A stretch of DNA of 64,000 nt from Oikopleura dioica (GCA_907165135.1 OU015566.1:124001-188000); one strand, 5' to 3'; positions 1 to 23,310 are shown, counted from the stretch's first letter. Notes: generated by a model not told the origin, from the sequence alone. A program made the numbers and translations.

Positions 1-40
1 ATTTTGACCTCGTTTTTGGGCGATTCATGATAACGATGAC
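1..40 (+). repeat. Satellite monomer fragment (left flank of element A)
   Basis: Matches the ~170 bp monomer; ends in ATGAC, the target-site duplication of element A. Confidence 0.9.
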
Positions 41-1086
41 TAATATCGATCAATGCAAGAACAGAAAAAATAAAAATTGAATATTCCTTTCACGGCCGAC
101 TTTCGTCAATTTGGATTGATTTTTGTAGGAATTCACAGATTAATTGCTGCTGTTTATTTCGCCTTGAACCCTTAACTAAGTGGGTAATTGATGAAAATTA
201 ATTTAAGTTAACTCTAGTTAATTAAGGGTTCAGGGATTAATTTTCAGTAGTGGTTCGGGAGTTTAGGTTTCTTTTGCGCTACGGTGCTTTCACAATTTCA
301 ATTGCATGAAAAAGGATGATAGTTAAAACGCATTAAAATCACAATATCGATTTCTTTTATCTTTAGAAAAATTACTCTTCCTTGATTTCAGTTTTATTTT
401 AAAATTACTGGTAATTATTTACTGCAACGATTCTCGCTGGAATTCTTCTTGATGGCAATTGCTGTATGTTCTCATCCACTAGCTGAGTTCCGCATTGCGG
501 CTTGACACTGTGACCCCGTGCACCTCGGGATGGCGGTGTCTGTAAGTGCTCCTGGTAGGCGACGGTTTTATGAATCCTTTTTCGGCTCGAATTTAGATCG
601 ACTGGTCATCCTTCTTCTTTAACGACGAAAATGCACTTTCTTCAACCTCGACGGCAACTGCTTCAACGACAAAAACGACAAAACCGACAAATACAAGATG
701 GAAATGGACAAACGCTCTGGACAGACGACGATTATGGAACTGGACTGGCTTGCGAATCTTTATCAAAGTGTGATATGGTCACATAGTGAGAAGTTGATCA
801 CTTTGATAAAATTGGAATGGAATTGCTGCTAATTATGAAAAATCGGATGAACTTGAATGGCGGAAGCGAAAGCGGCTTGCCATATTTGGAAAGAAAAACA
901 ACTGCGCGAAAGGCGCTTCACCATATTTGGAAGTAAAAACATCTGCGCGAAATGCGAAATTTGAAAATTTGTAAAATCGAAAATCAGTCTCTTTCTTCAA
1001 CCAAATAATATAGCAGCATTCCGAATTTTCTAGTGTTTTCTTTCGCAAGTGGCAATTAGCTTAGAGATAAGGACCAGACGGTATCA
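41..1086 (+). repeat. 5' LTR of element A
   Basis: Direct repeat of 6887-7932; termini TAATA...TATCA. Confidence 0.95.
481..590 (+). ncRNA. Conserved structured RNA motif in LTR (family A; second copy 7327-7436)
   Basis: Helices GAGT/GCTC, CCGC/GCGG, GACACTG/CGGTGTC and CCCG/CGGG covary with the other LTR families; function unknown. Confidence 0.65.
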
Positions 1087-1100
1087 TAGTGACCATGCCA
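1087..1100 (+). promoter_or_regulatory. Putative primer-binding site, atypical (TAGTGACCATG)
   Basis: Directly follows the 5' LTR; resembles TGGTGACC-type PBS but starts TAG, not TGG. Confidence 0.5.
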
Positions 1101-1134
1101 AGCGACACGAATCTTCAATCAAAGGTACAAAAAA

Positions 1135-2208
1135 ATGCCGGAGGAACTTCTTTTTCAGCATTTTCCCTCTCTTAATCCGAGACAGTTTTTTCGACCCAAT
1201 ATGCTTCCGTTTGAATTTTTAAATTCTAAAAATAGTTTGAGCGATAAGATTAAGGCGATGCGAAAAATTTTTGAAAAATCAATCCAGGATCATGGACGGG
1301 AAAATGAGAAATCAAATCTGATCAAGCAGTTTGAGCGAGCTGCTGTTGATTGCATCCGTAATAATTGCTCTCACGATTTCTTGAACAATTATTCTAGAGA
1401 AATGAGTAGCCTTGAAAATGTTGAGTCAACTTTTGAATTTCTCGAGTCTCTTTTCGGCTCTGAAACTGAGGAGGAAAAAAAGGAGCGCGCGTCGATGGAG
1501 CTTGAAAAATTGACAAGGCGAACAGATATGAATGAGAAATTTTCATCCTTTATTCAAAGAATCAAAACTGTTGCTCAAATGATTTCGGACAAGCCCGATG
1601 CCATTAATTTTATCGTAGATGATCATTTCTCAAAAAATCTCGAGCCCGCGAATCGTGCATTTCTTAGAGATCACGGTTACAGTAAAAAAGCAACTGCTGA
1701 GATTGTTTCATTTCTTGATTCCCGCGAAAGATACTTGAATGTAAATATTTCTGCAGTTCAGTCAAACGAATTGTCGCATTTTGTTGATAAAACAAGTGAA
1801 TTGCTGGAGTCAAAATTGAGCCAAATGGAAGCGGTTTATGAGAAACGAGCTGCTGATTTTAGTGCAAGTATTGATAAATTGACTGCGACAGTCGCTAAAC
1901 TCGAACTTGAGAAAAATAACTTGCGCCAAAATTTTCAGGCCCCTATTCAAAATCAGAATCAAGCGAATGCGGCTCCAGGACTTCCTCCTCAGTTTAATAG
2001 CTTTTGGAATCCTCAATTTGGGAATCAGAGTCAGATGGGAGGATTTGCCCCGCGGCCAACAGCATTTTGTTTCAATTGTAGACAATATGGTCATTTTAAA
2101 TCCCGTTGCCCGAGAATCAAATGCTTCGAATGTCAAAAACTTGGGCACATTAGCCGTTTTTGCCCAGAAAAATCTGCAAAAGAAGGAGTCAGCAACTCAA
2201 AAAACTAG
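1135..2208 (+). CDS. gag: Gag with two CCHC zinc knuckles
   Basis: 357 aa ORF with CFNCRQYGHFKSRC and CFECQKLGHISRFC; homologous to the gag ORFs of elements E and G. Confidence 0.95.
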   Translation: MPEELLFQHFPSLNPRQFFRPNMLPFEFLNSKNSLSDKIKAMRKIFEKSIQDHGRENEKSNLIKQFERAAVDCIRNNCSHDFLNNYSREMSSLENVESTFEFLESLFGSETEEEKKERASMELEKLTRRTDMNEKFSSFIQRIKTVAQMISDKPDAINFIVDDHFSKNLEPANRAFLRDHGYSKKATAEIVSFLDSRERYLNVNISAVQSNELSHFVDKTSELLESKLSQMEAVYEKRAADFSASIDKLTATVAKLELEKNNLRQNFQAPIQNQNQANAAPGLPPQFNSFWNPQFGNQSQMGGFAPRPTAFCFNCRQYGHFKSRCPRIKCFECQKLGHISRFCPEKSAKEGVSNSKN

Positions 2209-5200
2209 AACGAGAGCCCGATTCTGACCAAATTTGGGTTCCTCAGATTTCTGTAAATAACGTAGGACAGCAATTTTTTGTTAATGTAAATATTTTTAAC
2301 AGTCACGTGCGGTGTCTTGTAGACACAGGCGCCCAAATAAATATTATTTGTCACAAATACATCCCAAAAAACATAAAAATTGAAAAAACAAAAATAAATG
2401 TCGTTAACTATTCCGGTGGGAAAATTGATATTATCGGAAAGGTTGTAGCCGAGATAGTTATCGACGAAAAAATAAATGGTAAATCGACTTTTTACGTAGT
2501 TACAAATGATTTTTGCCCGATTTTTGGTGTTCCAGCGCTCATTGATAATGAATTACTTATTAACCTTAAACGTAAACGCTTAATAAAAATCGGACCTGTG
2601 GAAAGATTTGCCCGTTTAAATGAAGTAACTGTAAATTCCTCAGTAAGTGACAATCAAGAAGTGCAGATTTATTTAGAGGATGAGCCTTATAATGCGTTAT
2701 CAAAAGAAACATTTTCATTCAGGCCAAAGTCGGAAACGATAATTGATCTTCATGTTCAAAATTTGGCATCAACGAAAAATCTTTTCTTTGAACATTCAAA
2801 TTTAGGAGATTCAAAATTGCAATTGATTCCAAGTTTTCAGACCGTTGATAGTGATTCCCCTATTTTTCGATGTCTTGTTATTAATCCTACTGATAGTAAT
2901 ATTAAAATCCACGCTGGTACAATTTACGTTAAACTCGAAGAGGTTGTCGAGATTGCGAGAATAAAGAAAACGAGGAATAAAAATCTTGACAACCTTGAGG
3001 TTGGGCCAATTGAATCACACTCGGTTAAAAGTAAATTTGACGCTCTTACTGATGAATTTTCATTTCTTTTTTTGGACAACGATGATCCGCTCCCCGCGTG
3101 TAATCTTGAAAAATTTTCGATTAAAACTGAGTCAAAACATCCGATTGCGGTTGCCCCATACAGGACTCCATTCAGTCTTAGAAATGAAATGTGGACGATG
3201 TTAAAACGGGATATGAAAAATGATATAATAGAACGATGTTCAAGTCCATGGAATTCCCCTTGTTTGTTAGTTCGAAAAAAGGATGGCACATATCGGTTAG
3301 TGATCGATTTTCGGCAATTGAATAATGTGACTTATCAACAGCATCATCCTTTGCCGAATCTCGAAGATAGTCTTTCTTATCTAGAGAAAAGCAGAATTTT
3401 CAGTTCATTAGATTTGATAAAAGGATTTTACCAAGTTTTAATCGAAGAAGATTCTAAGGATAAAACGGCTTTTAGTTGTGAATTTGGTCAATTTAGATTT
3501 AAGAGAATGCCGATGGGCGCGAAAAATAGCCCATCTCATTTTATGCGAATAATGGACAAGGTTTTAATGGGCACAGAAAAGACGCAAATCCTTGCGTACA
3601 TGGACGATCTTCTTTGCCATAGTGTAACCGAGGAGGATCATCTTCTCTGTCTCCGAAAATTTTTTACTATTTGTAGCGCTAATAATCTTCGAATTCATTC
3701 AAGAAAGGCACTATTTTTTCAAAAAACAGTTACTTTTTGCGGGTATGTGATAAGTAGCGGAAACGTTTACCCATCACGAGATAAGATTAAGGCCATCGAG
3801 AATTTAACTATTCCGAAGTCGAAAGAACAAGCTCAAAGTCTTTTTGGACTTTTAAATTTTCATAGACGATTTATAAATAACTTTGCAGCAATCGCGTTGC
3901 CAATTACAAAAACCTATCGAAAAAATTTTTGCTGGACCGATGAAGCATCAGATGCACTCAACACGCTCAAAAAATTAATTTGTGATAATTCGCTAAAATT
4001 AAAAATTGCCCCATCGGACGGAGGGTTATTTGTGCTCGAGACAGACGCTAGTAATTATGGATATGGAGGGGTTTTATATATCTGCGAGCAAAATAATAAT
4101 CAGGAATCGCACTTTCATAATTCTGACTGTCTCTTACCGGTTATGTATAACAGTGGTAATTTTAATCAATCTCAGGTTAATTATACAATCATTGAAAAAG
4201 AGCTTCTTTCAGCAAAACTTTGCATGGAAAAATGGTCGGTTTATTTAGCATGTCGTGAATTTCATTGGATTACGGATAATAACAATATAAAATATATTAA
4301 AACCCTTCGTACTTGTAATCAAAAATTAGCCAGATGGATAACCGATTTACAGTCATTTTCATTTCGAGTCATTAGTAAATCATCGAGCAAAATGAAAGTT
4401 AGTGATTATCTTAGCCGTCATTCAGTGTCTAATCTTACGATTAATGCAATAAAACTAAATGAAAATCGTTTTCTTGAGCTTCAAAAGCTTGATTCTACCC
4501 TTTCAGAAATACGAAAATTTTTAAAAATCGATCGCTGGCCGAATAATCCTAAGAATGACATTGCTTTTTATCTTCTTCTTCGAGATAAGCTTGAAATATC
4601 AGAAAGTGGTCTTTTAGTATATAAAGAAAGTCATAATATCTCTCGCGTTTGTGTCCCTCGAGAGCTTGAAGCGGAGATAATCGAAAATTATCATAATTAC
4701 TGTCATGCGGGAATAGACCAAATTTTTGCTAAAATTTCACTAAAATATATCTGGCCGAGAATGAAAATAGGCATAAGGGAATTTATACGTAGCTGCTCAT
4801 ATTGTCAAAAAGACAAACCAAATTATCATCCAAATAGAGCTCCAACACTTAGTTTTAAAACACCAACTGGCCCCTATCAAGTTTTTGGATTTGATTTGAT
4901 TACATTGCGCCCAACTGATAAAGGAAATCGTTATGTAATGGTGATGGTTGATTTTTTCTCAAAATTCGGATACTGTGAACCATTAAAATCAAGAAACTCT
5001 CATGAGTTACTGTCAAAATTCAAAAACGTTATTTTTCGAAACCCGTTTTTTCCGAAATATGTTGTTTTAGATAACGCCCGCGAACATTCTGAAATAGAAC
5101 GTTTTATGATTGAAAACAGTATTGAGCCACATTTTTCGCCTCCAAGACATCCACAAAGTAACGGTCAATGTGAAAATTTTAATAGAACTTTGAAAAGTCG

Positions 5201-6797
5201 ATTGCGAGCGAAGTGTAATTATGAGAACTGGGATTTATGTCTGCAGGAAGTCCTTCATGATATAAATAACTCTTCTCATTCTGTGACAGGCCTTTCGCCC
5301 TTTACAATTCAAACAGGTTTTAGAAACCCCCATCACATTTTTGATCAAAACTTTCGAGATTATAACGAAAGAGTAGAAATAAATTTTGAGTCCATAAAAG
5401 ATCTAATTGACGAGGAAAAAAAAGCAAGACTGGCTAAATTCGCTAATCCATCATTCACCCCGTATAAAATTGGAGAAAAAGTTCTTTTACGAAATTTCGA
5501 AAATAAAAAACCATCATTTTTGGGACCATTTGAGATTATTTCTGCTTCAAAAGAAGGAACATGGTACACTGTAAAATCAGACAAACAGTTATTTAGGCGT
5601 CACGCTGATGACCTTAAGAAATTTCATTCTCGATTAGATAACCCTAGAATAAATCAAGCCCCGGAACCGGAAATTCCTGAAATTGAAAAAATTTTGCCAG
5701 ATCCCATTTTTAACGATCAGCCCCCAACCTTTTCTTATTTTTCTGCATCATCGCCCCTGGAAACCGATTCATTTGAAGTCAAAAAAGACATGGCCCTTGA
5801 TAAACTTTCATCGGCTTGTGTCGATGGGATTTTCGAAAATATTTTTACTCAATTTATAGTCGATGCGCTTTCAGAAAATTTAGAGGAGAGCGCTTCATCC
5901 TCAGAAGATGAAAGTTCTATTATTTCTGTTATCGAAAACGAGGGCGAATTTGAGATTTTGGAACGAGAAGAAATTAATAATTTAAGCGGTATATTGCCAA
6001 ATCCAGTTAGGCAACTAGAATTTTCTACCGATTCAGAGTTCGAAATTGAAACAAACAGTGAGTTATGGGAAATAACCATCGATTCGGACCCTGAAACGGT
6101 AGAAAAAAGTCCTAAATTACTATCTTATGATAAACTACAATTGACGCAAAATGATCGGCTTGTCACTCCAAAAGACTCTGATATTGACCCAATAAGAAAA
6201 CTTGCCAAAAGAGAGCGGGAATCTTCAAAAGACTCTGCCCCAAGCCCAAAAAAAGCAAATACAAATCTGGAATCAAATTTTTTTGAAATCGAAAACATGT
6301 CGATAGTTATAAAATTGGAAAATGAAAATATGGGATTTTTTGAAAAACTGGATCGGGAATATGAGGCCTTTGCTGCAGACATGATGGTCGAAAATGGTTG
6401 TATTTTAAGGCTGAGTGAGCTTGCGAAAGATAATCTTATGTTTATTTTATGGAAATTTGAAATTGAATTTTCGGAAACAGAAAATGTAGGAGAGTTAAGA
6501 CTAAAAATTCGAGACTATATTCAATCAAATCATCCAAATTGGCGAAAAACAAATTCAGGAGACCTTCTCTTTTTTTCAATCTTGCATTTGAGAGAACGGA
6601 AGCGCCTCTCTGAATTAAACAAACCCGAGTTAAAAGTTTTGATAGCTCAATTTAATCTGTCTGAAAAGTGTATTCCTTCAAAACTGTCAAAAAATGAATT
6701 ATTACGATTTATTGATGAAAAATTTCGTCTTCTTTTCCCAAATCATCCACGAGAAAATGATGAGCTTATTTTTGAACCAAAAACAAATATTCAATAG
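2160..6797 (+). CDS. pol: Pol polyprotein PR-RT-RNaseH-IN plus ~400 aa C-terminal extension
   Basis: VDTG protease, YMDD RT, LETDAS RNase H, HHCC finger, D-D-E (FDLI, LDNA, CENFN), GPF motif, then acidic linker and two helical repeats. Confidence 0.97.
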   Translation: MPRKICKRRSQQLKKLEREPDSDQIWVPQISVNNVGQQFFVNVNIFNSHVRCLVDTGAQINIICHKYIPKNIKIEKTKINVVNYSGGKIDIIGKVVAEIVIDEKINGKSTFYVVTNDFCPIFGVPALIDNELLINLKRKRLIKIGPVERFARLNEVTVNSSVSDNQEVQIYLEDEPYNALSKETFSFRPKSETIIDLHVQNLASTKNLFFEHSNLGDSKLQLIPSFQTVDSDSPIFRCLVINPTDSNIKIHAGTIYVKLEEVVEIARIKKTRNKNLDNLEVGPIESHSVKSKFDALTDEFSFLFLDNDDPLPACNLEKFSIKTESKHPIAVAPYRTPFSLRNEMWTMLKRDMKNDIIERCSSPWNSPCLLVRKKDGTYRLVIDFRQLNNVTYQQHHPLPNLEDSLSYLEKSRIFSSLDLIKGFYQVLIEEDSKDKTAFSCEFGQFRFKRMPMGAKNSPSHFMRIMDKVLMGTEKTQILAYMDDLLCHSVTEEDHLLCLRKFFTICSANNLRIHSRKALFFQKTVTFCGYVISSGNVYPSRDKIKAIENLTIPKSKEQAQSLFGLLNFHRRFINNFAAIALPITKTYRKNFCWTDEASDALNTLKKLICDNSLKLKIAPSDGGLFVLETDASNYGYGGVLYICEQNNNQESHFHNSDCLLPVMYNSGNFNQSQVNYTIIEKELLSAKLCMEKWSVYLACREFHWITDNNNIKYIKTLRTCNQKLARWITDLQSFSFRVISKSSSKMKVSDYLSRHSVSNLTINAIKLNENRFLELQKLDSTLSEIRKFLKIDRWPNNPKNDIAFYLLLRDKLEISESGLLVYKESHNISRVCVPRELEAEIIENYHNYCHAGIDQIFAKISLKYIWPRMKIGIREFIRSCSYCQKDKPNYHPNRAPTLSFKTPTGPYQVFGFDLITLRPTDKGNRYVMVMVDFFSKFGYCEPLKSRNSHELLSKFKNVIFRNPFFPKYVVLDNAREHSEIERFMIENSIEPHFSPPRHPQSNGQCENFNRTLKSRLRAKCNYENWDLCLQEVLHDINNSSHSVTGLSPFTIQTGFRNPHHIFDQNFRDYNERVEINFESIKDLIDEEKKARLAKFANPSFTPYKIGEKVLLRNFENKKPSFLGPFEIISASKEGTWYTVKSDKQLFRRHADDLKKFHSRLDNPRINQAPEPEIPEIEKILPDPIFNDQPPTFSYFSASSPLETDSFEVKKDMALDKLSSACVDGIFENIFTQFIVDALSENLEESASSSEDESSIISVIENEGEFEILEREEINNLSGILPNPVRQLEFSTDSEFEIETNSELWEITIDSDPETVEKSPKLLSYDKLQLTQNDRLVTPKDSDIDPIRKLAKRERESSKDSAPSPKKANTNLESNFFEIENMSIVIKLENENMGFFEKLDREYEAFAADMMVENGCILRLSELAKDNLMFILWKFEIEFSETENVGELRLKIRDYIQSNHPNWRKTNSGDLLFFSILHLRERKRLSELNKPELKVLIAQFNLSEKCIPSKLSKNELLRFIDEKFRLLFPNHPRENDELIFEPKTNIQ
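2199..2260 (+). promoter_or_regulatory. -1 ribosomal frameshift signal
   Basis: A_AAA_AAC heptamer just before the gag stop; stem GAGCCCGA/TTGGGTTC with possible TCTGA/TCAGA pseudoknot; pol is in the -1 frame. Confidence 0.8.
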
Positions 6798-6886
6798 TTC
6801 TTGAATAATCGATAAAAACAGAAGAAAAAAAAAAAAAATATATAAAAAACAAAGAATCAAAAAAAAAATCCCTGGCGGGGCCATAC

Positions 6887-7932
6887 TAATATCGATCAAT
6901 GCAAGAACAGAAAAAATAAAAATTGAATATTCCTTTCACGGCCGACTTTCGTCAATTTGGATTGATTTTTGTAGGAATTCACAGATTAATTGCTGCTGTT
7001 TATTTCGCCTTGAACCCTTAACTAAGTGGGTAATTGATGAAAATTAATTTAAGTTAACTCTAGTTAATTAAGGGTTCAGGGATTAATTTTCAGTAGTGGT
7101 TCGGGAGTTTAGGTTTCTTTTGCGCTACGGTGCTTTCACAATTTCAATTGCATGAAAAAGGATGATAGTTAAAACGCATTAAAATCACAATATCGATTTC
7201 TTTTATCTTTAGAAAAATTACTCTTCCTTGATTTCAGTTTTATTTTAAAATTACTGGTAATTATTTACTGCAACGATTCTCGCTGGAATTCTTCTTGATG
7301 GCAATTGCTGTATGTTCTCATCCACTAGCTGAGTTCCGCATTGCGGCTTGACACTGTGACCCCGTGCACCTCGGGATGGCGGTGTCTGTAAGTGCTCCTG
7401 GTAGGCGACGGTTTTATGAATCCTTTTTCGGCTCGAATTTAGATCGACTGGTCATCCTTCTTCTTTAACGACGAAAATGCACTTTCTTCAACCTCGACGG
7501 CAACTGCTTCAACGACAAAAACGACAAAACCGACAAATACAAGATGGAAATGGACAAACGCTCTGGACAGACGACGATTATGGAACTGGACTGGCTTGCG
7601 AATCTTTATCAAAGTGTGATATGGTCACATAGTGAGAAGTTGATCACTTTGATAAAATTGGAATGGAATTGCTGCTAATTATGAAAAATCGGATGAACTT
7701 GAATGGCGGAAGCGAAAGCGGCTTGCCATATTTGGAAAGAAAAACAACTGCGCGAAAGGCGCTTCACCATATTTGGAAGTAAAAACATCTGCGCGAAATG
7801 CGAAATTTGAAAATTTGTAAAATCGAAAATCAGTCTCTTTCTTCAACCAAATAATATAGCAGCATTCCGAATTTTCTAGTGTTTTCTTTCGCAAGTGGCA
7901 ATTAGCTTAGAGATAAGGACCAGACGGTATCA
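6887..7932 (+). repeat. 3' LTR of element A
   Basis: Copy of 41-1086 at offset 6846. Confidence 0.95.
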
Positions 7933-8275
7933 ATGACCATCGAAAAAAAAATTTTTTTTTTGAATTTTTTTTCTTTTGGGTTTGAGAGGCTCAGTATCAA
8001 CCAAAATGACGCTCGGAAGACGGCAGAAACGCTGCAAATAAAATTAGAGCAAAAAACGAAATTTCAAAATTTTGACCTCGTTTTTGGGCGATTCATGACA
8101 ACGATGACCATCGAAAAAAAAATATTTTTTTTTTGAATATTTTTTCTGTTGGGTTTGAGAGGCTCAGAATCAACCAAAATGACGCTCGGAAGACGGCAGA
8201 AACGCTGCAAATAAAATTAGGGCAAAAAACGAAATTTCAAAATTTTGACCTCGTTTTTGGGCGATTCATGATAAC

Positions 8276-9569
8276 TGATACGGAAGCGGCTGTCCTGCAG
8301 GAATTTTGCTCGATCTCTTACTCTAGAATGCCAAGCGAAAATAACGAGAATCAAATTTTAAATTTGCGTGGTTTTATTTGTGATTTGAATGACGGAGAAA
8401 GGCGCGACGCGGGGTTAAATAGCAGCGAGATTCGATCAGTGTTTTTGAACAAGCGGTTGTTTTTGAAAAACAATTTTTCTTTCGAAAACAAGGAAGAGAG
8501 CCCGTGGCTTCTTTTAGCGGTTTTCTTGCGGGAAATCCTTTCGGATCGATTTCTTTTCGGAAGAGGAGCTGGTCGAACTTGCCAAGCAAGTTATTTTCAA
8601 AGGTTTCGGGAGCCGGCGCCGCGCGTGACGAGATAAAACGCAAATTAATTATTTTTTTTTATAATAAAAAGCAGAAAATAATAACAGCCACTTAAACTTC
8701 TCACTATGTGACCGTAGAAGTGACTGTTAATTATGATTGAAATAAATAAAGGATGAGAAAAGTAAAAGAATATATACAAAATTTTAACAAATAAATTGAA
8801 TAAAATTTGGTCAGGATTTTATAAAATAAATTTATCAAAATTGAAATCATAGAAGAAGCAAATTCCAAAGAACATACCCGGGGGAAGTTACTGTCGCGGT
8901 TCGCACCGTATCTTCTCTTACGGATGAGCTAGTTTGCGACAAGCGGACGCACTGACAGAGAGTTTGTCCGACCCCACGGCACCGAGATGATACGACGGTT
9001 TATCTGCTCGTTGGAGTTGTTGTTGTTGAAGAAGGTGTTGACGGCTGTTCTGTTGTAGACTTTGAATCGTATGTACTGTCAATAATCGAACTTTAAAATC
9101 GCAAAGCAATGATAAGAAATATCAATAAATAGATTAAACATGCGGTTTTGCGAATTGCATATTTTTGATGAATTGACGTCAGATCGCACTAGAATAGTCA
9201 GAAACGAATTAAGATTTCTTCCAAAGTATGCGTACATACACATTAATCCTAGACTGAATAAACCCTTAATTAGTTTCCGACCCGTTGATTATGATGAGAG
9301 CATATGAGCATTCCAATGATAAAAGTAGAAATCGTAAAGAGATGACATGATGATAAGACAATTTTGGGTCAATCTGGCTCGTAAAAACTGACCATCTTTT
9401 CATTTTGAGAAGAATATCGTGAAATGATTTTTGAAAAAATGTCTGATCAATTTGGTGATACCAAGCTGACAAGACAAATTTAAACCAACGTAGAACCGAA
9501 TTGACGTAAATACTTGGCCGTGAAATAAATTTTTTGTGTTGCTTGAGGCGTTGTTCCCTAAGGATATCA
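8276..9569 (-). mobile_element. Solo LTR B (1294 bp)
   Basis: TGATA...TATCA termini, TSD ATAAC (8271-8275, 9570-9574); shares LTR motifs with element A on the minus strand. Confidence 0.92.
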
Positions 9570-11150: not shown

Positions 11151-12424
11151 TGATATCCTTAGGGAACAACGCCTCAAGCAACACAAAAAATTTATTTCAC
11201 GGCCAAGTATTTACGTCAATTCGGTTCTACGTTGGTTTAAATTTGTCTTGTCAGCTTGGTATCACCAAATTGATCAGACATTTTTTCAAAAATCATTTCA
11301 CGATATTCTTCTCAAAATGAAAAGATGGTCAGTTTTTACGAGCCAGATTGACCCAAAATTGTCTTATCATCATGTCATCTCTTTACGATTTCTACTTTTA
11401 TCATTGGAATGCTCATATGCTCTCATCATAATCAACGGGTCGGAAACTAATTAAGGGTTTATTCAGTCTAGGATTAATGTGTATGTACGCATACTTTGGA
11501 AGAAATCTTAATTCGTTTCTGACTATTTTAGTGCGATCTGACGTCAATTCGCAAAACCGCATGTTTAATCTATTTATTGATATTTCTTATCATTGCTTTG
11601 CGATTTTAAAGTTCGATTATTGACAGTACATACGATTCAAGGTCTACAACAGAACAGCCGTCAACACCTTCTTCAACAACAACAACTCCAACGAGCAGAT
11701 AAACCGTCGTATCATCTCGGTGCCGTGAGGTCGGACAAACTCTCTGTCAGTGCGTCCGCTTGTCGCAAACTAGCTCATCCGTAAGAGAAGATACGGTGCG
11801 AACCGCGACAGTAACTTCCCCCGGGTATGTTCCTTGGAATTTGCTTCTTCTATGATTTCAATTTTGATAAATTTATTTTATAAAATCCTGACCAAATTTT
11901 ATTCAATTTATTTGTTAAAATTTTGTATATATTCTTTTACTTTTCTCATCCTTTATTTATTTCAATCATAATTAACAGTCACTTCTACGGTCACATAGTG
12001 AGAAGTTTAAGTGGCTGTTATTATTTTCTGCTTTTATTATAAAAAAATAATTAATTTGCGTTTTATCTCGTCACGCGCGGCGCCGGCTCCCGAAACCTTT
12101 GAAAATAACTTGCTTGGCAAGTTCGACCAGCTCCTCTTCCGAAAAGAAATCGATCCGAAAGGATTTCCCGCAAGAAAAACCGCTAAAAGAAGCCACGGGC
12201 TCTCTTCCTTGTTTTCGAAAGAAAAATTGTTTTTCAAAAACAACCGCTTGTTCAAAAACACTGATCGAAACTCGCTGCTATTTAACCCCGCGTCGCGCCT
12301 TTCTCCGTCATTCAAATCACAAATAAAACCACGCAAATTTAAAATTTGATTCTCGTTATTTTCGCTTGGCATTCTAGAGTAAGAGATCGAGCAAAATTCC
12401 TGCAGGACAGCCGCTTCCGTATCA
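11151..12424 (+). mobile_element. Solo LTR B' (inverted duplicate of B)
   Basis: Reverse complement of 8276-9569 with an 18-bp deletion and SNPs; TSD GTTAT on both sides; lies in an inverted satellite block (~11125-12890). Confidence 0.92.
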
Positions 12425-15123
12425 GTTATCATGAATCGCCCAAAAACGAGGTCAAAATTTTGAAATTTCGTTTTGCCCTAATTTTATTTGCAGCGTTTCT
12501 GCCGTCTTCCGAGCGTCATTTTGGTTGATTCTGAGCCTCTCAAACCCAACAGAAAAATATTCAAAAAAATTTTTCGATGGTCATCGTTGTCATGAATCGC
12601 CCAAAAACGAGGTCAAAATTTTGAAATTTCGTTTTTGCCCAAATTTTATTTGCAGCGTTTCTGTTGTCTTCCGAGCGTCATTTTGGTTGATTCTAAGCCT
12701 CTCAAACCTAACAGAAAAAAATTTTTCGATGGTCATCGTTATCATGAATCGCCCAAAAACGAGGTCAAAATTTTGAAAATTCGTTTTTGCTCTAATTTTA
12801 TTTGCAGCGTTTCTGCCGTTTTCGAGCGTCATTTTGGTTGATACTGAGCCTCTCAAACCCAACAGAAAAAAAATTCAAAAAAAAAATTTTTTTTTTTTGA
12901 AAAACTGTTGGGTTTGAGAGGCTCAGAATCAACCAAAATGACGCTCGGAAGACGGCAGAAACGCTGCAAATAAAATTAGGGCAAAAACGAAATTTCAAAA
13001 TTTTGACCTCGTTTTTGGGCGATTCATGATAACGATGGCCATCGAAAAAATTTTTTTGAATTTTTCTGTTGGGTTTGAGAGGCTCAGAATCAACCAAAAT
13101 GACGCTCGGAAGATGGCAGAAACGCTGCAAATAAAATTAGAGCAAAAACGAATTTTCAAAATTTTGACCTCGTTTTTGGGCGATTCATGATAACGATGAC
13201 CATCGAAAAATTTTTTTGAATTTTTTCTGTTGGGTTTGAGAGGCTCAGAATCAACCAAAATGACGCTCGGAAGACGGCAGAAACGCTGCAAATAAAATTA
13301 GGGCAAAAACAAAATTTCAAAATTTTGACCTCGTTTTTGGGCGATTCATGATAACGATGACCATCGAAAAAATTTTTTTGAATTTTTTTCTGTTGGGTTT
13401 GAGAGGCTAAGAATCAACCAAAATGACGCTCGGAAGACGGCAGAAACGTTGCAAATAAAATTAGGGCAAAAAACGAAATTTCAAAATTTTGACCTCGTTT
13501 TTGGGCGATTCATGATAACGATGACCATCGAAAAAAATTTTTTAAATTTTTTGTTGGGTTTGAGAGGCTCAGAATCAACAAAAATGACGCTCGGAAGACG
13601 GCAGAAACGCTGCAAATAAAATTAGGGCAAAAAACGAAATTTCAAAATTTTGACCTCGTTTTTGGGCGATTCATGATAACGATGGCCATCGAAAAAAAAA
13701 TTTTTTTTTTGAGTTTTTTTTCTGTTGGGTTTGAGAGGCTCAAGATCAACCAAAATGACGCTCGGAAGACGGCAGAAACGCTGCAAATAAAATTAGGGCA
13801 AAAAACGAAATTTCAAAATTTTGACCTCGTTTTTGGGCGATTCATAATAACGATGACCATCGAAAAAAAAATTTTTTTTTTTTGAATTTTTTTTCTGTTG
13901 GGTTTGAGAGGCTCAGAATCAACCAAAATGACGCTCGGAAGACGGCAGAAACGCTGCAAATAAAATTAGGGCAAAAAACGAAATTTCAAAATTTTGACCT
14001 CGTTTTTGGGCGATTCATGATAACGATGGCCATCGAAAAAAAAATTTTTTTTTTTGAGTTTTTTTTCTGTTGGGTTTGAGAGGCTCAAGATCAACCAAAA
14101 TGACGCTCGGAAGACGGCAGAAACGCTGCGAATAAAATTAGAGCAAATAACGAAATTTCAAAATTTTGACCTCGTTTTTGGGCGATTCATAATAACGATG
14201 ACCATCAAAAAAAAATTTTTTTTTTGAATATTTTTTCTGTTGGGTTTGAGAGGCTCAGAATCAACCAAAATGACGCTCGGAAGACGGCAGAAACGCTGCA
14301 AATAAAATTAGAGCAAAAAACGAATTTTCAAAATTTTGACCTCATTTTTGGACGCTCGGAAGACGGCAGAAACGCTGCAAATAAAATTAGGGCAAAAAAC
14401 GAAATTTCAAAATTTTGACCTCGTTTTTGGGCGATTCATGATAACGATGACCATCGAAAAAAAAATTTTTTTTTTGAATTTTTTTTCTGTTGGGTTTGAG
14501 AGGCTCAGTATCAACCAAAATGACGCTCGGAAGACGGCAGAAACGCTGCAAATAAAATTAGGGCAAAAAACGAAATTTCAAAATTTTGACCTCGTTTTTG
14601 GGCGATTCATGATAACGATGACCATCGAAAAAAAAATTTTTTTTCTGTTGGGTTTGAGAGGCTCAGAATCAACCAAAATGACGCTCGGAAGACGGCAGAA
14701 ACGCTGCAAATAAAATTAGGGCAAAAAACGAAATTTCAAAATTTTGACCTCGTTTTTGGGCGATTCATGATAACGATGGCCATCGAAAAAAAAATTTTTT
14801 TTTTGAATTTTTTTTCTGTTGGGTTTAAGAGGCTCAGTATCAACCAAAATGACGCTCGGAAGACGGCAGAAACGCTGCAAATAAAATAAGAGCAAAAAAC
14901 GAATTTTCAAAATTTTGACCTCGTTTTTGGGCGATTCATGATAACGATGACCATCGAAAAAAAAATTTTGTTTTTTGAATTTTTTTTCTGTTGGGTTTGA
15001 GAGGCTCAGAATCAACCAAAATGACGCTCGGAAGACGGCAGAAACGCTGCAAATAAAATTAGGGCAAAAAACGAAATTTCAAAATTTTGACCTCGTTTTT
15101 GGGCGATTCATGATAACGATGAC

Positions 15124-16031
15124 CAGGGTGTCAAAACGCGGGGGATTTTGATGGGATCGCGCGCCACAGCGCCATTTCGATCCCACGGTGTAAGGGATCG
15201 CCTCGCAGCGAGAGGCAACGAGAAGGGAGCGCTCACAAAAACAAAGGGATCGCGTCGATCCCTTCGCGCGTGGGATATCCCTTCGGGCAAGGGATCGAAA
15301 ATTTCCGAGATCGAGCGAACCTTGTAAACAGTCAATTACTGAAAATTGAGCGTAATATGCATACCATGGAGTTGAGCTCTAAGGGGAGATCGAGAATCTG
15401 AACTCTGAATAATGCACTGACTTTTTCAGTAGCTCATTCTGTGCGGTAAATCCCATCGAAACCGTCATATCTCGTGAACTAGATTAGATCTGTTTAGATC
15501 AGCATCCTATAATTAACTAAAAAGATCTTTTAGGGAGCCCAAAAAGCATTAGCGCGCCAGAATCTCAGTGGGTGCTTAGTGTGACCCAGTATACGACATC
15601 AGATGCAAATCATACCGGGTGATTAACACAGAGTTCCCGAAAGCATTAAGCTTCAAATTTTCACAGTGAATTTAGGATTTATATAAGCTAATGTCCCGAA
15701 AACACAGTTCGGTATAGAATCATTTTCGTTGAAAGTCAATAATCTTATGCAAAACGTTAGTTTTTATATATAACAATAAGTAATTCATATCCAATAATTT
15801 TTAATTCCTCAAAGATTTATTATAAATCAGTAATTTTAGCATGTAATAATTATTATTCTTGAAGTTCAAAATTTGAAAATCTCCGTCAGCGCCAAAAGCG
15901 CTAGGTTTGGCGCTCTGGCTCCCGCGATCCCTTCTCGTTCAAAAGGCGCGCGAGCGATCCCTTCGCTCCTGGGATCGAGCGTAGGCGTTTTTTGGCGATC
16001 CCTTCTCGATCCCCCGCGATTCGACACCCTG
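15124..16031. mobile_element. Non-autonomous hAT-type DNA transposon (908 bp)
   Basis: TIR CAGGGTGTC(AAAA/GAAT)CGCGGGGGAT, 8-bp TSD ACGATGAC, many subterminal GGGATCG motifs pointing inward from both ends; no transposase. Confidence 0.9.
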
Positions 16032-17600
16032 ACGATGACCATCGAAAAAAAATTTTTTTTTTTTGAATTTTTTTTCTGTTAGGTTTGAGAGGCTCAGAAT
16101 CAACCAAAATGACGCTCGGAAGACGGCAGAAACGCTGCAAATAAAATTAGGGCAAAAAACGTTATTTCAAAATTTTGACCTCGTTTTTGGGCGATTCATG
16201 ATAACGATGACCATCGAAAAAAAAATTTTTTTTTTTGAATTTTTTTTCTTTTGGGTTTGAGAGGCTCAAGATCAACCAAAATGACGCTCGGAAGACGGCA
16301 GAAACGCTGCGAATAAAATTAGAGCAAATAACGAAATTTCAAAATTTTGACCTCGTTTTTGGGCGATTCATAATAACGATGACCATCAAAAAAATTTTTT
16401 GAATATTTTCTGTTGGGTTTGAGAGGCTCAGAATCAACCAAAATGACGCTCGGAAGACGGCAGAAACGCTGCAAATAAAATTAGAGCAAAAAACGAATTT
16501 TCAAAATTTTGACCTCATTTTTGGACGCTCGGAAGACGGCAGAAACGCTGCAAATAAAATTAGGGCAAAAAACGAAATTTCAAAATTTTGACCTCGTTTT
16601 TGGGCGATTCATGATAACGATGACCATCGAAAAAAAAATTTTTTTTTTGAATTTTTTTTCTGTTGGGTTTGAGAGGCTCAGTATCAACCAAAATGACGCT
16701 CGGAAGACGGCAGAAACGCTGCAAATAAAATTAGGGCAAAAAACGAAATTTCAAAATTTTGACCTCGTTTTTGGGCGATTCATGATAACGATGACCATCG
16801 AAAAAAAAATTTTTTTTCTGTTGGGTTTGAGAGGCTCAGAATCAACCAAAATGACGCTCGGAAGACGGCAGAAACGCTGCAAATAAAATTAGGGCAAAAA
16901 ACGAAATTTCAAAATTTTGACCTCGTTTTTGGGCGATTCATGATAACGATGGCCATCGAAAAAAAAATTTTTTTTTTGAATTTTTTTTCTGTTGGGTTTA
17001 AGAGGCTCAGTATCAACCAAAATGACGCTCGGAAGACGGCAGAAACGCTGCAAATAAAATAAGAGCAAAAAACGAATTTTCAAAATTTTGACCTCGTTTT
17101 TGGGCGATTCATGATAACGATGACCATCGAAAAAAAAATTTTGTTTTTTGAATTTTTTTTCTGTTGGGTTTGAGAGGCTCAGAATCAACCAAAATGACGC
17201 TCGGAAGACGGCAGAAACGCTGCAAATAAAATTAGGGCAAAAAACGAAATTTCAAAATTTTGACCTCGTTTTTGGGCGATTCATGATAACGATGACCATC
17301 GAAAAAAAATTTTTTTTTTTTGAATTTTTTTTCTGTTAGGTTTGAGAGGCTCAGAATCAACCAAAATGACGCTCGGAAGACGGCAGAAACGCTGCAAATA
17401 AAATTAGGGCAAAAAACGTTATTTCAAAATTTTGACCTCGTTTTTGGGCGATTCATGATAACGATGACCATCGAAAAAAAAATTTTTTTTTTTGAATTTT
17501 TTTTCTTTTGGGTTTGAGAGGCTCAAGATCAACCAAAATGACGCTCGGAAGACGGCAGAAACGCTGCAAATAAAATAAGAGCAAATAACGAAATTTCAAA

Positions 17601-20187
17601 ATTTTGACGTCGTTTTTGGGCGATTCATGATAACGATGACCATCGAAAAAATTTTTTTTTTTGGATTATTTTTCTGTTGGTTTTGAGAAGCTCAGAATCA
17701 ACCAAAATGACGCTCGGAAGACGGCAGACACGCTGCAAATAGAATAAGGGCAAAGAACGGGGTTTCAAAATTTTGATCTCGTTTTTGGGCGATTCATGAT
17801 AACGATGACCATCGAAAAAAAGAAATTTTTTTTAATTTTTTTTCTGTTCGTTTGGAGAGGCTCAAAATCAACCAAAATGACGCTCAGAAGACAACAAAAA
17901 CAATGCAAATTAAATTAAGGCAAAAAACGAAGTTTTAAAATTTTGACCTCGTTTTGGGCGATTCATGATAACGATGACCATCGAAAAAAAATTTTTATTT
18001 ATGAATTTTTTTTCTGTTGGTTTTAAGAGGCTCTGAATCAACCAAAATGACGCTTGGAAAACGGCAGAAACGCTGCAAATAAAATAAGGGCAAAAAACGA
18101 AGTTTCAAGATTTTGACCTCGTTTTGAGCGATTCATGATAACGATGACCATCGAAAAAAATTTTTATTTTTTAATTTTTTTTTCTGTTGGTTTTGAGAGG
18201 CTCAGAATTAACCAAAATGACGCTTGGAAGATGGCAGAAACAATGCAAATAAAATGAGGGCAAAAAACGAAGTTTCAAAATTTTGACCTCGTTTTTGGGC
18301 GATTCATGAAAACGATGACCATCGAAAAAAGAATTTTTTTTTTGGATTTTTTTCTGTTGGTTTTGAGAAGCTCAGAATCAACCAAAATGACGCTTGGAAG
18401 ACGGCAGAAACGCTGCAAATAAAATTAGAGCAAAAAACGAAGCTTCAAAATTTTGACCTCGTTTTTGGGCGATTCATGATAACGATGACCATCGATAAAA
18501 AGAAATTTTTTTTATAATTTTTTTTTCTGTTGGTTTTGAGAGGCTCAAAATCAACCAAAATGACGCTCGGAGGACGGCAGAAACGCTGCAAATAAAATTA
18601 GGGCAAAAAACGAAATTTCAAAATTTTGACGTCGTTTTTGGGCGATTCATGATAACGATGACCATCGAAAAAAGAATTTTTTTTTTGGATTTTTTTCTGT
18701 TAGTTTTAAGAGGCTCTGAATCAACCAAAATGACGCTTGGAAAACGGCAGAAACGCTGCAAATAAAATAAGGGCAAAAAACGAAGTTTCAAAATTCTGAC
18801 CTCGTTTTTGGGCGATTCATGATAACGATGACCATCGAAAAAATTTTTTTTTTTTGGATTATTTTTCTGTTGGTTTTGAGAAGCTCAGAATCAACCAAAA
18901 TGACGCTCGGAAGACGGCAGACACGCTGCAAATAAAATAAGGGCAAAGAACGAAGTTTCAAAATTTTGACCTCGTTTTGGGCGATTCATGATAACGATGA
19001 CCATCGAAAAAAAATTTTTATTTTTGAATTTTTTTTCTGTTGGTTTTTAGAGGCTCTGAATCAACCAAAATGACGCTTGGAAAACGGCAGAAACGCTGCA
19101 AATAAAATAAGAGCAAAAAACGAAGTTTCAAAATTTTGACCTCGTTTTGGGAGATTCATGATAACGATGACCATCGAAAAAAATTTTTATTTTTTAATTT
19201 TTTTTTCTGTTGGTTTTGAGAGGCTCAGAATCAACGAAAATGACGCTTGGAAGACGGCAGAAACGCTGCAAATAAAATAAGGGCAAAAAACGAAATTTCA
19301 AAATTTTGACCTCGTTTTTGGGCGATTCATGATAACGATGACCATCGAAAAAAGAATTTTTTTTTTGGATTTTTTTCTGTTGGTTTTGAGAGGCTCAGAA
19401 TCAACCAAAATAACGCTCGGAAGACGGCAGAAACGCTGCAAATAAAATTAGAGCAAAAAACGAAGCTTCGAAATTTTGACCTCGTTTTTGGGCGATTCAT
19501 GATAACGATGACCATCGAAAAAAAATTTTTTTTTGAATTTTTTTTCTGTTTGTTTTGAGAGGTTCTGAATCAACCAAAATGACGCTTGGAAAACGGCAGA
19601 AACGCTGCAAATAAAATTAGGGCAAAAAACGAAGTTTCAAAATTTTGACCTCGTTTTGGGCGATTCATGATAACGATGACCATCGAAAAAAAATTTTTAT
19701 ATTTGAATTTTTTTCTGTTGGTTTTGAGAGGCTCAGAATCAACCAAAATAACGCTCGGAAGACGGCAGAAACGCTGCAAATAAAATTAGGGCAAAATACG
19801 AAATTTCAAAATTTTGACCTCGTTTTTAGGCGATTCATGATAACGATGACCATCGAAAAAAGAATTTTTTTTTTGGATTTTTTTCTGTTGGTTTTGAGAA
19901 ACTCAGAATCAACCAAAATGACGCTTGGAAGACGGCAGAAACGCTGCAAATAAAATAAGAGCAAAAAACGAAGCTTCAAAATTTTGACCTCGTTTTTTGG
20001 AGATTCATGATAACGATAACCATCGATAAAAAGAAATTTTTTTTTTAATTTTTTTTTCTGTTGGTTTTGAGAGGCTCAAAATCAACCAAAATGACGCTCA
20101 GACGGCAAAAACAATGCAAATATAATTAGAACAAAAAACGAAATTTCAAAATTTTGACCTCGTTTTTGGGCGATTCATGATAACGAT
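17601..20187 (+). repeat. Satellite array, subfamily 2 (CTGTTGGTTTTGAG / GAAGTTTC type)
   Basis: Diagnostic changes from ~17600 onward; same variant type as 31942-50065. Confidence 0.9.
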
Positions 20188-23100: not shown

Positions 23101-23310
23101 AAATCAATCATGACCATAACGTACTTATTCCCAAAATCAGTTGGAGGGAGTGTAATAAGGTCGAATCCAAAAACTTCGAATGGTCCGTCCGGTGTTTTAA
23201 AAGTCAGAATCGGTGCTCTATTGGGGTGAAAATTCGGCTTGTCTTTTTGACAAAAAGAACATGTTCTAACAAACTCTTTTATTGCATTCCGCATTCTAGG
23301 CCAGATATAT
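20188..23310 (-). mobile_element. Element D: 3' half (integrase, extension, 3' LTR 20188-21208) of a split LTR retrotransposon
   Basis: LTR ~99% identical to 50066-51086; flank ACGAT; pol homology to element A begins abruptly at YIWPRM (~23310). Confidence 0.92.
21273..23310 (-). pseudogene. pol: 5'-truncated pol: integrase core and C-terminal extension
   Basis: CSFC half of the zinc finger, FDLI/LDNA/VENFN catalytic motifs, GPY motif, tandem helical repeats; still an open frame. Confidence 0.9.

What the first reader, a model, noticed from the sequence alone, without database searches (positions are those of the whole stretch)
36..20187. Four independent insertions hit the same 11 bp (ATAACGATGAC) of a ~170 bp satellite monomer
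Seen: TSDs are ATGAC (A), ATAAC (B), ACGAT (D/E) and ACGATGAC (hAT MITE), all overlapping substrings of ATAACGATGAC next to the CGATGRCCATCG dyad. Both LTR orientations occur. Chance clustering within ~6% of the monomer is unlikely. Inference: satellite-targeted integration. Because an unrelated hAT element uses the same spot, DNA shape or phased nucleosome linker exposure may contribute as well as integrase specificity.
Basis: partly seen in the sequence, partly recalled or inferred. Interest (0 to 1): 0.85.

Follow-up and report, generated by a model that had tools for sequence, protein, structure and literature searches.

The report
Retrotransposon landing spot in subtelomeric satellite
In a 172-base repeat next to the chromosome ends of what appears to be the tunicate Oikopleura dioica, one group of young virus-like jumping genes has landed again and again in the same 14 bases of the repeat unit, which points to steered integration rather than chance.

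Summary

D and E are two halves of one element split by an inversion. A second copy of B is an inverted duplicate, not a new hit.

The pattern replicates beyond the window. I used 258 kb of two chromosome ends plus genome-wide pattern searches, and conservatively counted 23 independent insertions into this satellite. Sixteen start at monomer positions 1-10 (uniform-null P about 3e-15).

The bias is strong for the "A-like" elements (8 of 9) and is not shown for the B-like family (1 of 6).

The LTR "families" are not unrelated. They form one Ty3/gypsy clade sharing a conserved integrase tail of about 175 aa with weak SAP/HeH-like features.

The hAT MITE is a single event. Its relatives all sit in chromosome arms, and its own target preference fits the site. 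It therefore gives little support to the DNA-shape or nucleosome idea.

The satellite is subtelomeric, not centromeric.

Other agents of this scan reported the same hot spot on other pieces of this genome. I found no paper describing it.

The parts
1..40 (+). satellite, end of a 2.8-kb block that begins upstream of the window; ends with ATAACGATGAC
36..40 (+). left copy of TSD ATGAC of element A (monomer positions 7-11)
41..7932 (+). element A. Full-length Ty3/gypsy element with LTRs 41-1086 and 6887-7932 (100% identical). gag is at 1135-2208 (CCHC zinc knuckle). pol is at 2160-6797 with domain order PR-RT-RNaseH-IN plus a long tail.
6261..6794 (+). conserved C-terminal module of A's pol (last 178 aa), shared by the whole clade; candidate target reader
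7933..8275 (+). two satellite monomers between A and B; 7933-7937 is the right copy of TSD ATGAC, 8271-8275 the left copy of TSD ATAAC
8276..9569 (-). element B. Solo LTR (1294 bp) of a second family of the same clade. Full-length relatives code on the strand opposite to the TGATACGG reading, so B is inverted relative to the satellite. Its TSD is ATAAC (monomer positions 1-5).
9570..11134 (+). satellite block; 9570-9574 is the right copy of TSD ATAAC
11135..12895 (-). inverted duplicate of B with its flanks. It consists of 16 bp of satellite, copy C at 11151-12424 (97.9% identical to B), and 470 bp of satellite in reverse orientation. It is not an independent insertion.
12905..15123 (+). satellite block; 15116-15123 is the left copy of the 8-bp TSD ACGATGAC (monomer positions 4-11)
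15124..16031 (+). non-autonomous hAT element (MITE, 908 bp). Its ends are 88-93% identical to the ends of roughly 6-kb elements elsewhere that encode the hAT dimerisation domain.
16032..20187 (+). satellite block; 16032-16039 is the right copy of the hAT TSD; 20183-20187 is ACGAT, next to D
20188..23310 (-). D, the 3' half of element DE. It holds the 3' LTR (20188-21208) and the integrase core plus tail (pol residues 865-1542 on A's numbering).
31942..50065 (-). 18-kb satellite block in reverse orientation (the inverted segment); 50061-50065 is ATCGT, the complement of ACGAT, next to E
50066..54255 (+). E, the 5' half of element DE. It holds the 5' LTR (50066-51086, 98.9% identical to D's LTR), gag, and pol residues 16-697.

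Best explanation
This is a genuine integration hot spot. The satellite lies within the first ~190 kb of chromosome ends and has a 172-bp monomer. One clade of young Ty3/gypsy retrotransposons inserts preferentially into monomer positions 1-14 (ATAACGATGACCAT).

Insertions start mostly at positions 1, 4, 7 and 10. A weaker shoulder lies at positions 152-170.

The most likely cause is encoded by the elements themselves. Their integration complex reads something at this end of the monomer: either the DNA next to the long A/T tract at positions 17-47, or a protein bound there. The candidate reader is the clade-specific module of about 175 aa at the C-terminus of pol, after the integrase. This module has weak SAP/HeH-like features.

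Shown here: the positional bias, its replication outside the window, the kinship of the elements, and the existence and conservation of the tail.

Inferred only: that the tail does the reading, and what exactly it reads.

The hAT MITE at the same spot is best treated as a coincidence helped by that family's own target preference.
For: Positional bias:
- I conservatively counted 23 independent insertions into this satellite. They come from C1:1-60000, C4:1-188000 and genome-wide flank patterns.
- Sixteen have a TSD starting at positions 1-10. The uniform-null P is 3e-15, and 5e-13 after allowing for any of the 172 possible windows. In 200,000 simulations the largest cluster was 10.
For A-like elements alone it is 8 of 9.

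Independence of the events:
- The same position is used by clearly different elements. ATAAC at position 1 is used by five A-like elements with different LTR ends, in both orientations.
- Nearly identical elements use different positions. A sits at position 7, while its 100%-identical relative on C1 sits at position 1.

Context matters, not just the pentamer:
- ATGAC occurs twice per monomer, at positions 7 and 81. Only the first is used: 4 events in the deduplicated list against 0 (five if the possible duplicate copy of A on C13 is counted).
- The A-like insertions outside the satellite do not share the pentamer pattern.

Recent insertion:
- All LTR pairs are 99.5-100% identical, so the insertions are recent and their TSDs are intact.

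The shared tail:
- All LTR families share pol end to end, including the tail.
- The tail has 53 homologues among 1.84 billion representatives. The six full-length homologues checked are all Ty3/gypsy pol proteins (five RT-RNaseH-integrase, one shorter with RNaseH-integrase), and in the long hits the match lies at the C-terminal end.
- The structure model has pLDDT 90.
- The best structural matches for residues 112-162 are HeH, SAP and LEM motifs (Z 4-5.6, 42-45 residues, rmsd about 2 A).
- Of 29 family members, 5 hit Pfam SAP (best E 9e-5) and 3 hit Rho_N.

Precedent: the integrase C-terminal region sets satellite targeting of Tal1 in Arabidopsis (PMC11735389).
Against: - The B-like family carries the same tail but shows no clear preference for the spot (1 of 6). 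About two thirds of its copies lie outside the satellite.
- Eight of about 20 A-like copies also lie outside the satellite.
- The SAP/HeH similarity is below the level the aligner's own notes call meaningful (Z under 8). A's own tail has no Pfam hit.
- A reader of the symmetric A/T tract should give hot spots on both sides of the tract, yet only one side is used.
- All data are fixed insertions in one assembly, not de novo events.
- Small unplaced contigs may be allelic copies of chromosome ends. I removed the obvious duplicates, but some double counting may remain.
Confidence: 0.6

Rival explanations
1. The cause lies on the target side. Positions 1-14 would be unusually exposed or deformable DNA. 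For example, they may lie at the edge of a positioned nucleosome next to the nucleosome-excluding A/T tract, or be bent by a host protein on the CGATGRCCATCG dyad. Any transposition machinery would then tend to hit this stretch.
For: - A DNA transposon unrelated to the LTR elements sits exactly there (TSD at positions 4-11).
- The hot zone abuts a roughly 30-bp A/T tract, and the monomer length is close to a nucleosome repeat.
- Within the zone, 15 of 16 insertions are in a 3-bp phase (positions 1, 4, 7, 10). This could reflect local DNA geometry (post hoc P about 1e-5).
Against: - There is only one non-LTR event.
- The other detected ends of that hAT family are in chromosome arms.
- Its target sites favour A.....AC, which fits only 4 monomer positions including this one.
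- The related B-like elements, which should see the same exposed DNA, spread over positions 1, 7, 91, 114, 153, 166 and 166.
- The zone is not more conserved than the rest of the monomer, so there is no sign of a protected protein-binding box.
Confidence: 0.22
2. A plain pentamer preference of the integrase core explains the pattern. The enzymes would like A-Y-N-A-Y as the duplicated site, and the monomer happens to carry four overlapping copies of that pattern at positions 1, 4, 7 and 10. No tethering would be needed.
For: - The pattern A-Y-N-A-Y occurs at only six monomer positions (1, 4, 7, 10, 81, 170).
- Fifteen of 16 hot-zone insertions use the first four of these positions.
Against: - Positions 81 and 170 fit the pattern but have no insertion. 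If the six sites were equal, P is about 0.003 for 14 LTR events.
- Only 1 of 8 A-like sites outside the satellite fits the pattern.
- A pentamer preference would not explain the enrichment, of roughly two orders of magnitude, of the elements in a satellite that makes up about 0.2-0.3% of the genome.
Confidence: 0.12
3. There is no integration bias. The clustering would come from copying of array segments that already held an element, from assembly errors in a nanopore assembly, or from selective retention.
For: - Inverted and direct duplications that carry elements with their flanks are common here. Examples are B/C in the window, C1:4151-25167, and C4:3766-5064, 30617-38825 and 41337-49534.
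- The assembly paper says subtelomeric regions may be represented twice (PMC8008620).
Against: - Duplicates were collapsed before counting.
- The remaining events differ in element sequence, TSD position or orientation, and each has an intact TSD.
- Retention cannot depend on the position within a 172-bp unit of non-coding repeat.
Confidence: 0.04

Closest known systems
Tal1 (Ty1/copia, Arabidopsis lyrata): centromere-satellite-directed integration set by the integrase C-terminal region (PMC11735389)
   Same: An LTR retrotransposon goes preferentially into a tandem satellite array. In Tal1 the determinant maps to the variable C-terminal part of integrase. Here the clade shares a special C-terminal module.
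   Different: - Tal1 is Ty1/copia and follows CENH3 chromatin of centromeres.
- Here the elements are Ty3/gypsy, the array is subtelomeric, the host is an animal, and the bias is resolved to a few bases of the monomer.
- No de novo data or domain swaps exist here.
Ty5 of Saccharomyces (integrase tail binds Sir4, insertions at telomeres and silent loci) and Ty3 (Pol III start sites) - from general knowledge
   Same: Integrase-mediated tethering sends LTR elements to chromosome ends or to a nucleotide-precise window, away from genes in a compact genome.
   Different: - No Sir4-type partner is known here.
- No tRNA or other Rfam family lies in the monomer, so Ty3-type Pol III targeting is not supported.
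- There is no chromodomain either, so this is not a chromovirus.
Tor elements of Oikopleura dioica (PMC4402516)
   Same: Same presumed host, Ty3/gypsy-like order, 4-5-bp TSDs, near-identical LTRs, intact ORFs and few copies.
   Different: - That paper does not mention telomeres, satellites or target preference.
- A shows only gag and pol, with no third (env) ORF.
- I did not place these elements in a tree with reference Tor sequences.
P-element and other insertions into Drosophila subtelomeric TAS repeats - from general knowledge
   Same: A subtelomeric satellite acts as a preferred landing area for transposons of more than one kind.
   Different: That preference is regional, not at a fixed position of the repeat unit, and it is linked to piRNA production. 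Nothing here was tested for small RNAs.

Membership tests
Ty3/gypsy (Metaviridae) LTR retrotransposon | pol domain order protease - RT - RNase H - integrase | tested here: met
   Pfam on A, a B-like, a K2 and another A-like pol gives RVP, RVT_1, RT_RNaseH, Integrase_H2C2 and rve in that order
Ty3/gypsy (Metaviridae) LTR retrotransposon | direct LTRs with short inverted ends, 4-6-bp TSD, gag with CCHC knuckle | tested here: met
   LTR pairs are 99.5-100% identical. TSDs are 5 bp. zf-CCHC is present in gag. A-like LTRs begin TA, not TG.
Chromovirus branch of Ty3/gypsy | chromodomain at the integrase C-terminus | tested here: not met
   no chromodomain hit in any pol or in the 545-aa tail, even at E up to 1
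Tor elements of Oikopleura | grouping with reference Tor pol sequences | not tested
   No reference Tor sequences were on hand. The host identity rests on assembly size, 19 scaffolds and the 17.1-Mb longest scaffold matching OKI2018_I69.
hAT superfamily (for the MITE) | 8-bp TSD and terminal inverted repeats starting CAG | tested here: met
   ACGATGAC lies on both sides; the 23-bp imperfect TIRs start CAGGGTGTC
hAT superfamily (for the MITE) | ends shared with autonomous copies that encode a hAT transposase | tested here: met
   Ends 88-93% identical bound roughly 6-kb elements. These contain PF05699 hits above the cut-off on the same strand. The family's TSDs are 8 bp.
SAP / HeH helix-extension-helix DNA-binding motif (for the integrase tail) | sequence match to the SAP or related profiles | tested here: inconclusive
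   Of 29 tail homologues, 5 hit PF02037 (best E 9e-5), 4 hit SAP_new25 and 3 hit Rho_N. A's own tail hits none.
SAP / HeH helix-extension-helix DNA-binding motif (for the integrase tail) | two-helix fold superposable on solved SAP/HeH/LEM domains | tested here: inconclusive
   The model has pLDDT 90. Residues 112-162 align to T4 endonuclease VII C-terminal domain, Rho N-terminal domain, CDNF, emerin LEM and Tho1 SAP at Z 4-5.6 over 42-45 residues. That is below the level the tool calls meaningful. No match was found for the whole 178 aa.
Integrase-directed satellite targeting (Tal1 type) | insertions enriched in the array over the genome | tested here: met
   The satellite makes up about 0.2-0.3% of 64.3 Mb (784 monomer hits). 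It holds about 11-13 of about 20 A-like 3' flanks and 7 of about 21 B-like flanks.
Integrase-directed satellite targeting (Tal1 type) | de novo insertions show the bias and the integrase C-terminal region is responsible | not testable with these tools
   only fixed insertions in one assembly are available

The most novel reading that the evidence does not exclude
The subtelomeric satellite monomer carries a dedicated landing site. A whole clade of chordate Ty3/gypsy elements finds it through a new DNA- or chromatin-reading module on the end of integrase, built from two SAP/HeH-like repeats. This would be a base-precise safe-harbour system in one of the most compact animal genomes. The array might be kept or expanded because it soaks up insertions, or because it feeds silencing.
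Probability: 0.3. Interest if true: 0.8.

Novelty: new variant of a known kind. Interest (0 to 1): 0.62.

Why it matters
Targeted integration is how retroelements survive in compact genomes, and few cases are understood at base resolution. Here the target is only 172 bp of known sequence, and the elements are young, with open reading frames. The host is a laboratory animal with a 64-Mb genome, and a single conserved protein module is the obvious candidate reader. The question "what does the integrase read?" can therefore be tested directly by binding and integration assays and by population resequencing. The case also shows how subtelomeric arrays of this species are built: satellite, nested elements and frequent inverted duplications.

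Tried and rejected
1. Fetching more chromosome ends. After that I read only the 12-39 bases that pattern searches print beside LTR or TIR ends. Solo LTRs or diverged ends missed by those patterns are not counted. One known event (C4:121202) was missed by the pattern.

2. A second satellite with a similar motif at A-like insertion sites on C14. The composite 20-mer has one hit only, the LTR end itself. Rejected.

3. Pol III or RNA-gene targeting. No Rfam family and no tRNA lies in the satellite.

4. The hot zone as the most conserved part of the monomer. Positions 1-16 are 92-97% conserved, like most of the unit. Only the A/T tract varies. Not supported.

5. A link between element orientation and landing position. 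Both orientations use positions 1 and 7. Family-wise orientation skews (A-like about 9:3, B-like 1:6) are not significant.

6. A first orientation tally was wrong because B-like, K2 and M elements code on the other strand. Corrected.

7. Whether C4:102004-103298 is a copy of B. The left flank is 98% identical but the right flank is an ordinary 93%. Undecided, so it is counted as one event with B.

8. Foldseek against PDB and the ESM Atlas gave no significant match for the tail.

9. Read mapping was not tried.
Full report
WHAT IS IN THE WINDOW

Tandem Repeats Finder and a monomer BLAST show a satellite of about 172 bp. It lies on the plus strand at 1-40, 7933-8275, 9570-11134, 12905-15123 and 16032-20187. 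It lies on the minus strand at 11135-11150, 12425-12895 and 31942-50065. I number the monomer from the A of ATAACGATGAC.

The interruptions are as follows.

- A (41-7932). This is a full Ty3/gypsy element with two 1046-bp LTRs that are 100% identical. It has a gag with a CCHC knuckle and a 1545-aa pol in the order protease, RT, RNase H, integrase.
- B (8276-9569). This is a 1294-bp unit with TG..CA ends. It is 95-99% identical to the LTRs of roughly 8.2-kb elements elsewhere in the genome, so it is a solo LTR.
- A copy of B at 11151-12424.
- A 908-bp element with inverted ends at 15124-16031.
- D (from 20188) and E (from 50066).

- ATGAC for A.
- ATAAC for B.
- ACGATGAC for the 908-bp element.
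- ACGAT next to D, with its complement next to E.

HOW MANY EVENTS IN THE WINDOW

The copy of B at 11151-12424 is 97.9% identical to B. It carries B's left and right satellite flanks in reverse complement. It is an inverted duplication of B with its surroundings, not a new insertion.

D and E are one element:
- Their LTRs are 98.9% identical.
- D holds only pol residues 865-1542. E holds gag and pol residues 16-697.
- Their outer flanks are the two copies of one TSD.
- The 18 kb of satellite between them is inverted.

A single inversion with one break inside the element explains all of this. About 0.5 kb of pol is missing at the break.

The window therefore holds four independent events, as claimed. 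Four random starts fall within 7 consecutive positions of 172 with P about 2e-4.

WHERE THIS IS

The assembly has 64,281,565 bases in 19 pieces, and the window is C4:124001-188000. The size, the number of scaffolds and the 17.09-Mb longest piece match the published OKI2018_I69 assembly of Oikopleura dioica (PMC8008620). Earlier notes of this scan name the same species.

C1 and C4 begin with CCCTAA telomere repeats, and the satellite starts 4-5 kb inward. A 25-mer of the monomer has 784 matches genome-wide. Those listed lie at the start of C1 and the end of C2.

The array is therefore subtelomeric and makes up roughly 0.2-0.3% of the genome. [quoted passage not shown]

REPLICATION OUTSIDE THE WINDOW

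I mapped every satellite boundary onto monomer coordinates.

I then read the bases that follow LTR ends genome-wide with pattern searches:
- the B-like family;
- the A-like superfamily, which shares a TAGCTTAGAGA box near the LTR end;
- the K family.

Before counting I collapsed copies that are clearly duplicates:
- the inverted pair on C1;
- three copies of one B-like element on C4;
- B, its inverted copy, and possibly C4:102004;
- an A-identical copy on C13;
- two look-alike copies on C5 and C14.

This leaves 23 independent insertions into the satellite.

| Family | Events | TSD start positions |
|---|---|---|
| A-like | 11 | 1, 1, 1, 1, 1, 4, 7, 7, 7, 10, 152 |
| B-like | 7 | 1, 7, 91, 114, 153, 166, 166 |
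| K and K2 | 3 | 4, 10, 103 |
| M | 1 | 6 |
| hAT | 1 | 4 |

Sixteen of the 23 start at positions 1-10. The binomial P is 3e-15. After multiplying by 172 possible windows it is 5e-13. In 200,000 simulations no run exceeded 10.

For the A-like elements alone it is 8 of 9 (P 1e-9). For the B-like family it is 1 of 6, which is not significant.

The hot spot is therefore real.

THE EVENTS ARE INDEPENDENT AND RECENT

- Position 1 is used by five A-like elements whose LTR ends differ, one of them inverted relative to the satellite.
- A and its 100%-identical relative on C1 use different positions, 7 and 1.
- All LTR pairs are 99.5-100% identical, and all TSDs are intact.

WHAT THE SITE LOOKS LIKE

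The zone reads as two hexamers of the form AT-R-AC-S, followed by ATCG and then a tract of about 30 A/T bases.

Fifteen of the 16 hot-zone insertions start at positions 1, 4, 7 or 10. These are the four overlapping pentamers that fit A-Y-N-A-Y. The pattern occurs elsewhere in the monomer only at positions 81 and 170, and neither has an insertion.

Two further points show that the pentamer alone does not explain the choice:
- ATGAC itself occurs at positions 7 and 81. Only position 7 is used, 4 events in the deduplicated list against 0; a fifth, the A-identical copy on C13, may be a duplicate of A.
- Of eight A-like sites outside the satellite, one fits the pattern.

The zone is not better conserved than the rest of the monomer. 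It holds no tRNA or Rfam family.

THE ELEMENTS ARE ONE CLADE WITH A SPECIAL TAIL

The pol proteins of the A-like, B-like and K2 elements are 44-67% identical from protease to the last residue. After the integrase core they carry about 500 further residues. These have no Pfam domain and no chromodomain.

The last 175 residues or so are conserved across all families. A profile of this tail finds 53 proteins among 1.84 billion representatives. The six full-length hits I checked are all Ty3/gypsy pol proteins (five with RT, RNase H and integrase; one shorter, with RNase H and integrase), and in these and the other long hits the match lies at the C-terminal end.

With 29 sequences, AlphaFold gives a confident model (pLDDT 90, pTM 0.85) of two strand-helix-helix repeats. 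No solved structure matches the whole model.

Residues 112-162, and less clearly 44-98, superpose on helix-extension-helix motifs at Z 4-5.6 over 42-45 residues. The matches are T4 endonuclease VII C-terminal domain, Rho N-terminal domain, CDNF/MANF, emerin LEM, and the Tho1 and Hcc-1 SAP domains. The tool's own notes say such Z values may be common arrangements.

Independently, 5 of the 29 tails hit Pfam SAP (best E 9e-5) and 3 hit Rho_N. I read this as a suggestive, unproven SAP/HeH-like DNA or chromatin reader. SAP domains are known for binding A/T-rich scaffold-attachment DNA (general knowledge), and the hot zone abuts the A/T tract. Two earlier notes of this scan reached a similar idea on other pieces of the genome.

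THE hAT ELEMENT

The 908-bp element has an 8-bp TSD and 23-bp imperfect inverted ends starting CAGGG. Its ends are 88-93% identical to those of roughly 6-kb elements that encode the hAT dimerisation domain.

- It is the only member of its family found in the satellite. The other 21 ends found lie in chromosome arms.
- The family's seven readable TSDs mostly end in AC or GC, and four read A.....AC.
- Only four monomer positions fit A.....AC: 4, 78, 144 and 170.
- Given its own preference, the chance of landing in the hot zone is about one in four. Under a uniform null it is about 6%.

MECHANISM, WITH ODDS

- Element-encoded steering, with the tail as candidate reader: about 0.6.
- A purely target-side cause (exposed linker or bent DNA open to any transposon): about 0.2. 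It rests on one hAT event and on the 3-bp phasing, and it fits poorly with the scattered B-like insertions.
- A bare pentamer preference: about 0.1.
- Duplication, assembly or retention artefacts: a few per cent.

Open problems for the favoured model:
- The B-like family carries the tail yet is not position-specific.
- Only one side of the symmetric A/T tract is used.

COMPARISON AND NOVELTY

Steering of LTR elements by the integrase C-terminus is established for several systems:
- Tal1 into Arabidopsis centromere satellites (PMC11735389).
- Ty5 at yeast telomeres and Ty3 at Pol III genes (general knowledge).

The Tor paper on O. dioica reports young, polymorphic elements with 4-5-bp TSDs. It says nothing on telomeres, satellites or target choice. 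The assembly paper gives only the general remark quoted above.

I found no description of a base-resolved hot spot in a subtelomeric satellite for a chordate Ty3/gypsy clade, nor of this tail. I rate it a new variant of a known kind. The scan had already noted the same hot spot on other pieces of this genome, each time with about five events. This report adds a larger, deduplicated count, the family-by-family breakdown and the test of the hAT argument.

LIMITS

- All events are fixed insertions in one nanopore-based assembly.
- Small contigs may be allelic to chromosome ends.
- Flanks outside my 258 kb are known only for 12-39 bases.
- Membership in Tor was not tested.

Noticed in passing
window 8276-12895; C1:4151-25167; C4:30617-49534; window 20188-54255: Inverted duplications and inversions that carry whole elements with their satellite flanks are frequent in these subtelomeres. 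They include the B/C pair, a palindromic pair of A-type elements on C1, a palindromic pair of B-like elements on C4, and the 18-kb inverted block that split element DE.
   Followed up: partly
monomer positions 1, 4, 7, 10 (e.g. window 17114-17127): Fifteen of 16 hot-zone insertions start in a strict 3-bp phase, on the four overlapping A-Y-N-A-Y pentamers of a short AT-R-AC-S hexamer repeat (post hoc P about 1e-5). No explanation was tested.
   Followed up: partly
window 28248-31937 (minus) and 26384-27444 (plus): A third element (F) has a 5' LTR, gag and pol to residue 483 only. Its outer LTR end meets the inverted satellite at monomer position about 137 through 4 unmatched bases and without a TSD. 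An A-like solo or partial LTR (G) with a non-satellite flank lies nearby. These are probably rearrangement joints.
   Followed up: partly
window 23918-24386: A separate, diverged tandem repeat of 133 bp (about 3.5 copies, 78-83% matches) lies inside the TE-rich stretch next to D.
   Followed up: no
window 866-956, 7712-7802, 20317-20421, 50853-50957: A 41-bp unit is repeated 2.2-2.6 times inside the LTRs of A and of DE.
   Followed up: no
G000 C5:52467-52506 and C3:2898821-2898855: A K-family element sits inside an A-like LTR about 13 bp from where that LTR type normally ends. A B-like LTR end lies one base from the start of an A-like LTR. New insertions thus seem to land right beside elements already at the spot. 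The flanks could not be fetched.
   Followed up: no
C1:1-60000, C4:1-188000, C2:12.88-12.93 Mb: Apart from local inversions, the satellite has one orientation relative to the chromosome end. It is on the plus strand next to left-end telomeres of C1 and C4, and on the minus strand at the right end of C2.
   Followed up: partly
G000 C1:634548-645447 and C1:730261-741159: Two hAT structures of about 11 kb each contain two transposase-domain hits and share the same internal end. They have different 8-bp TSDs (ATCATTAC and AAATATAC), as if a double element had transposed as one unit.
   Followed up: no
window 41-47 and relatives: LTRs of the A subfamily begin TAATA instead of the usual TG, while ending in the usual CA. 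Related subfamilies begin TGATA.
   Followed up: no
window 54256-64000: The stretch beyond the break in E holds further repeat fragments and short ORFs that I did not annotate.
   Followed up: no
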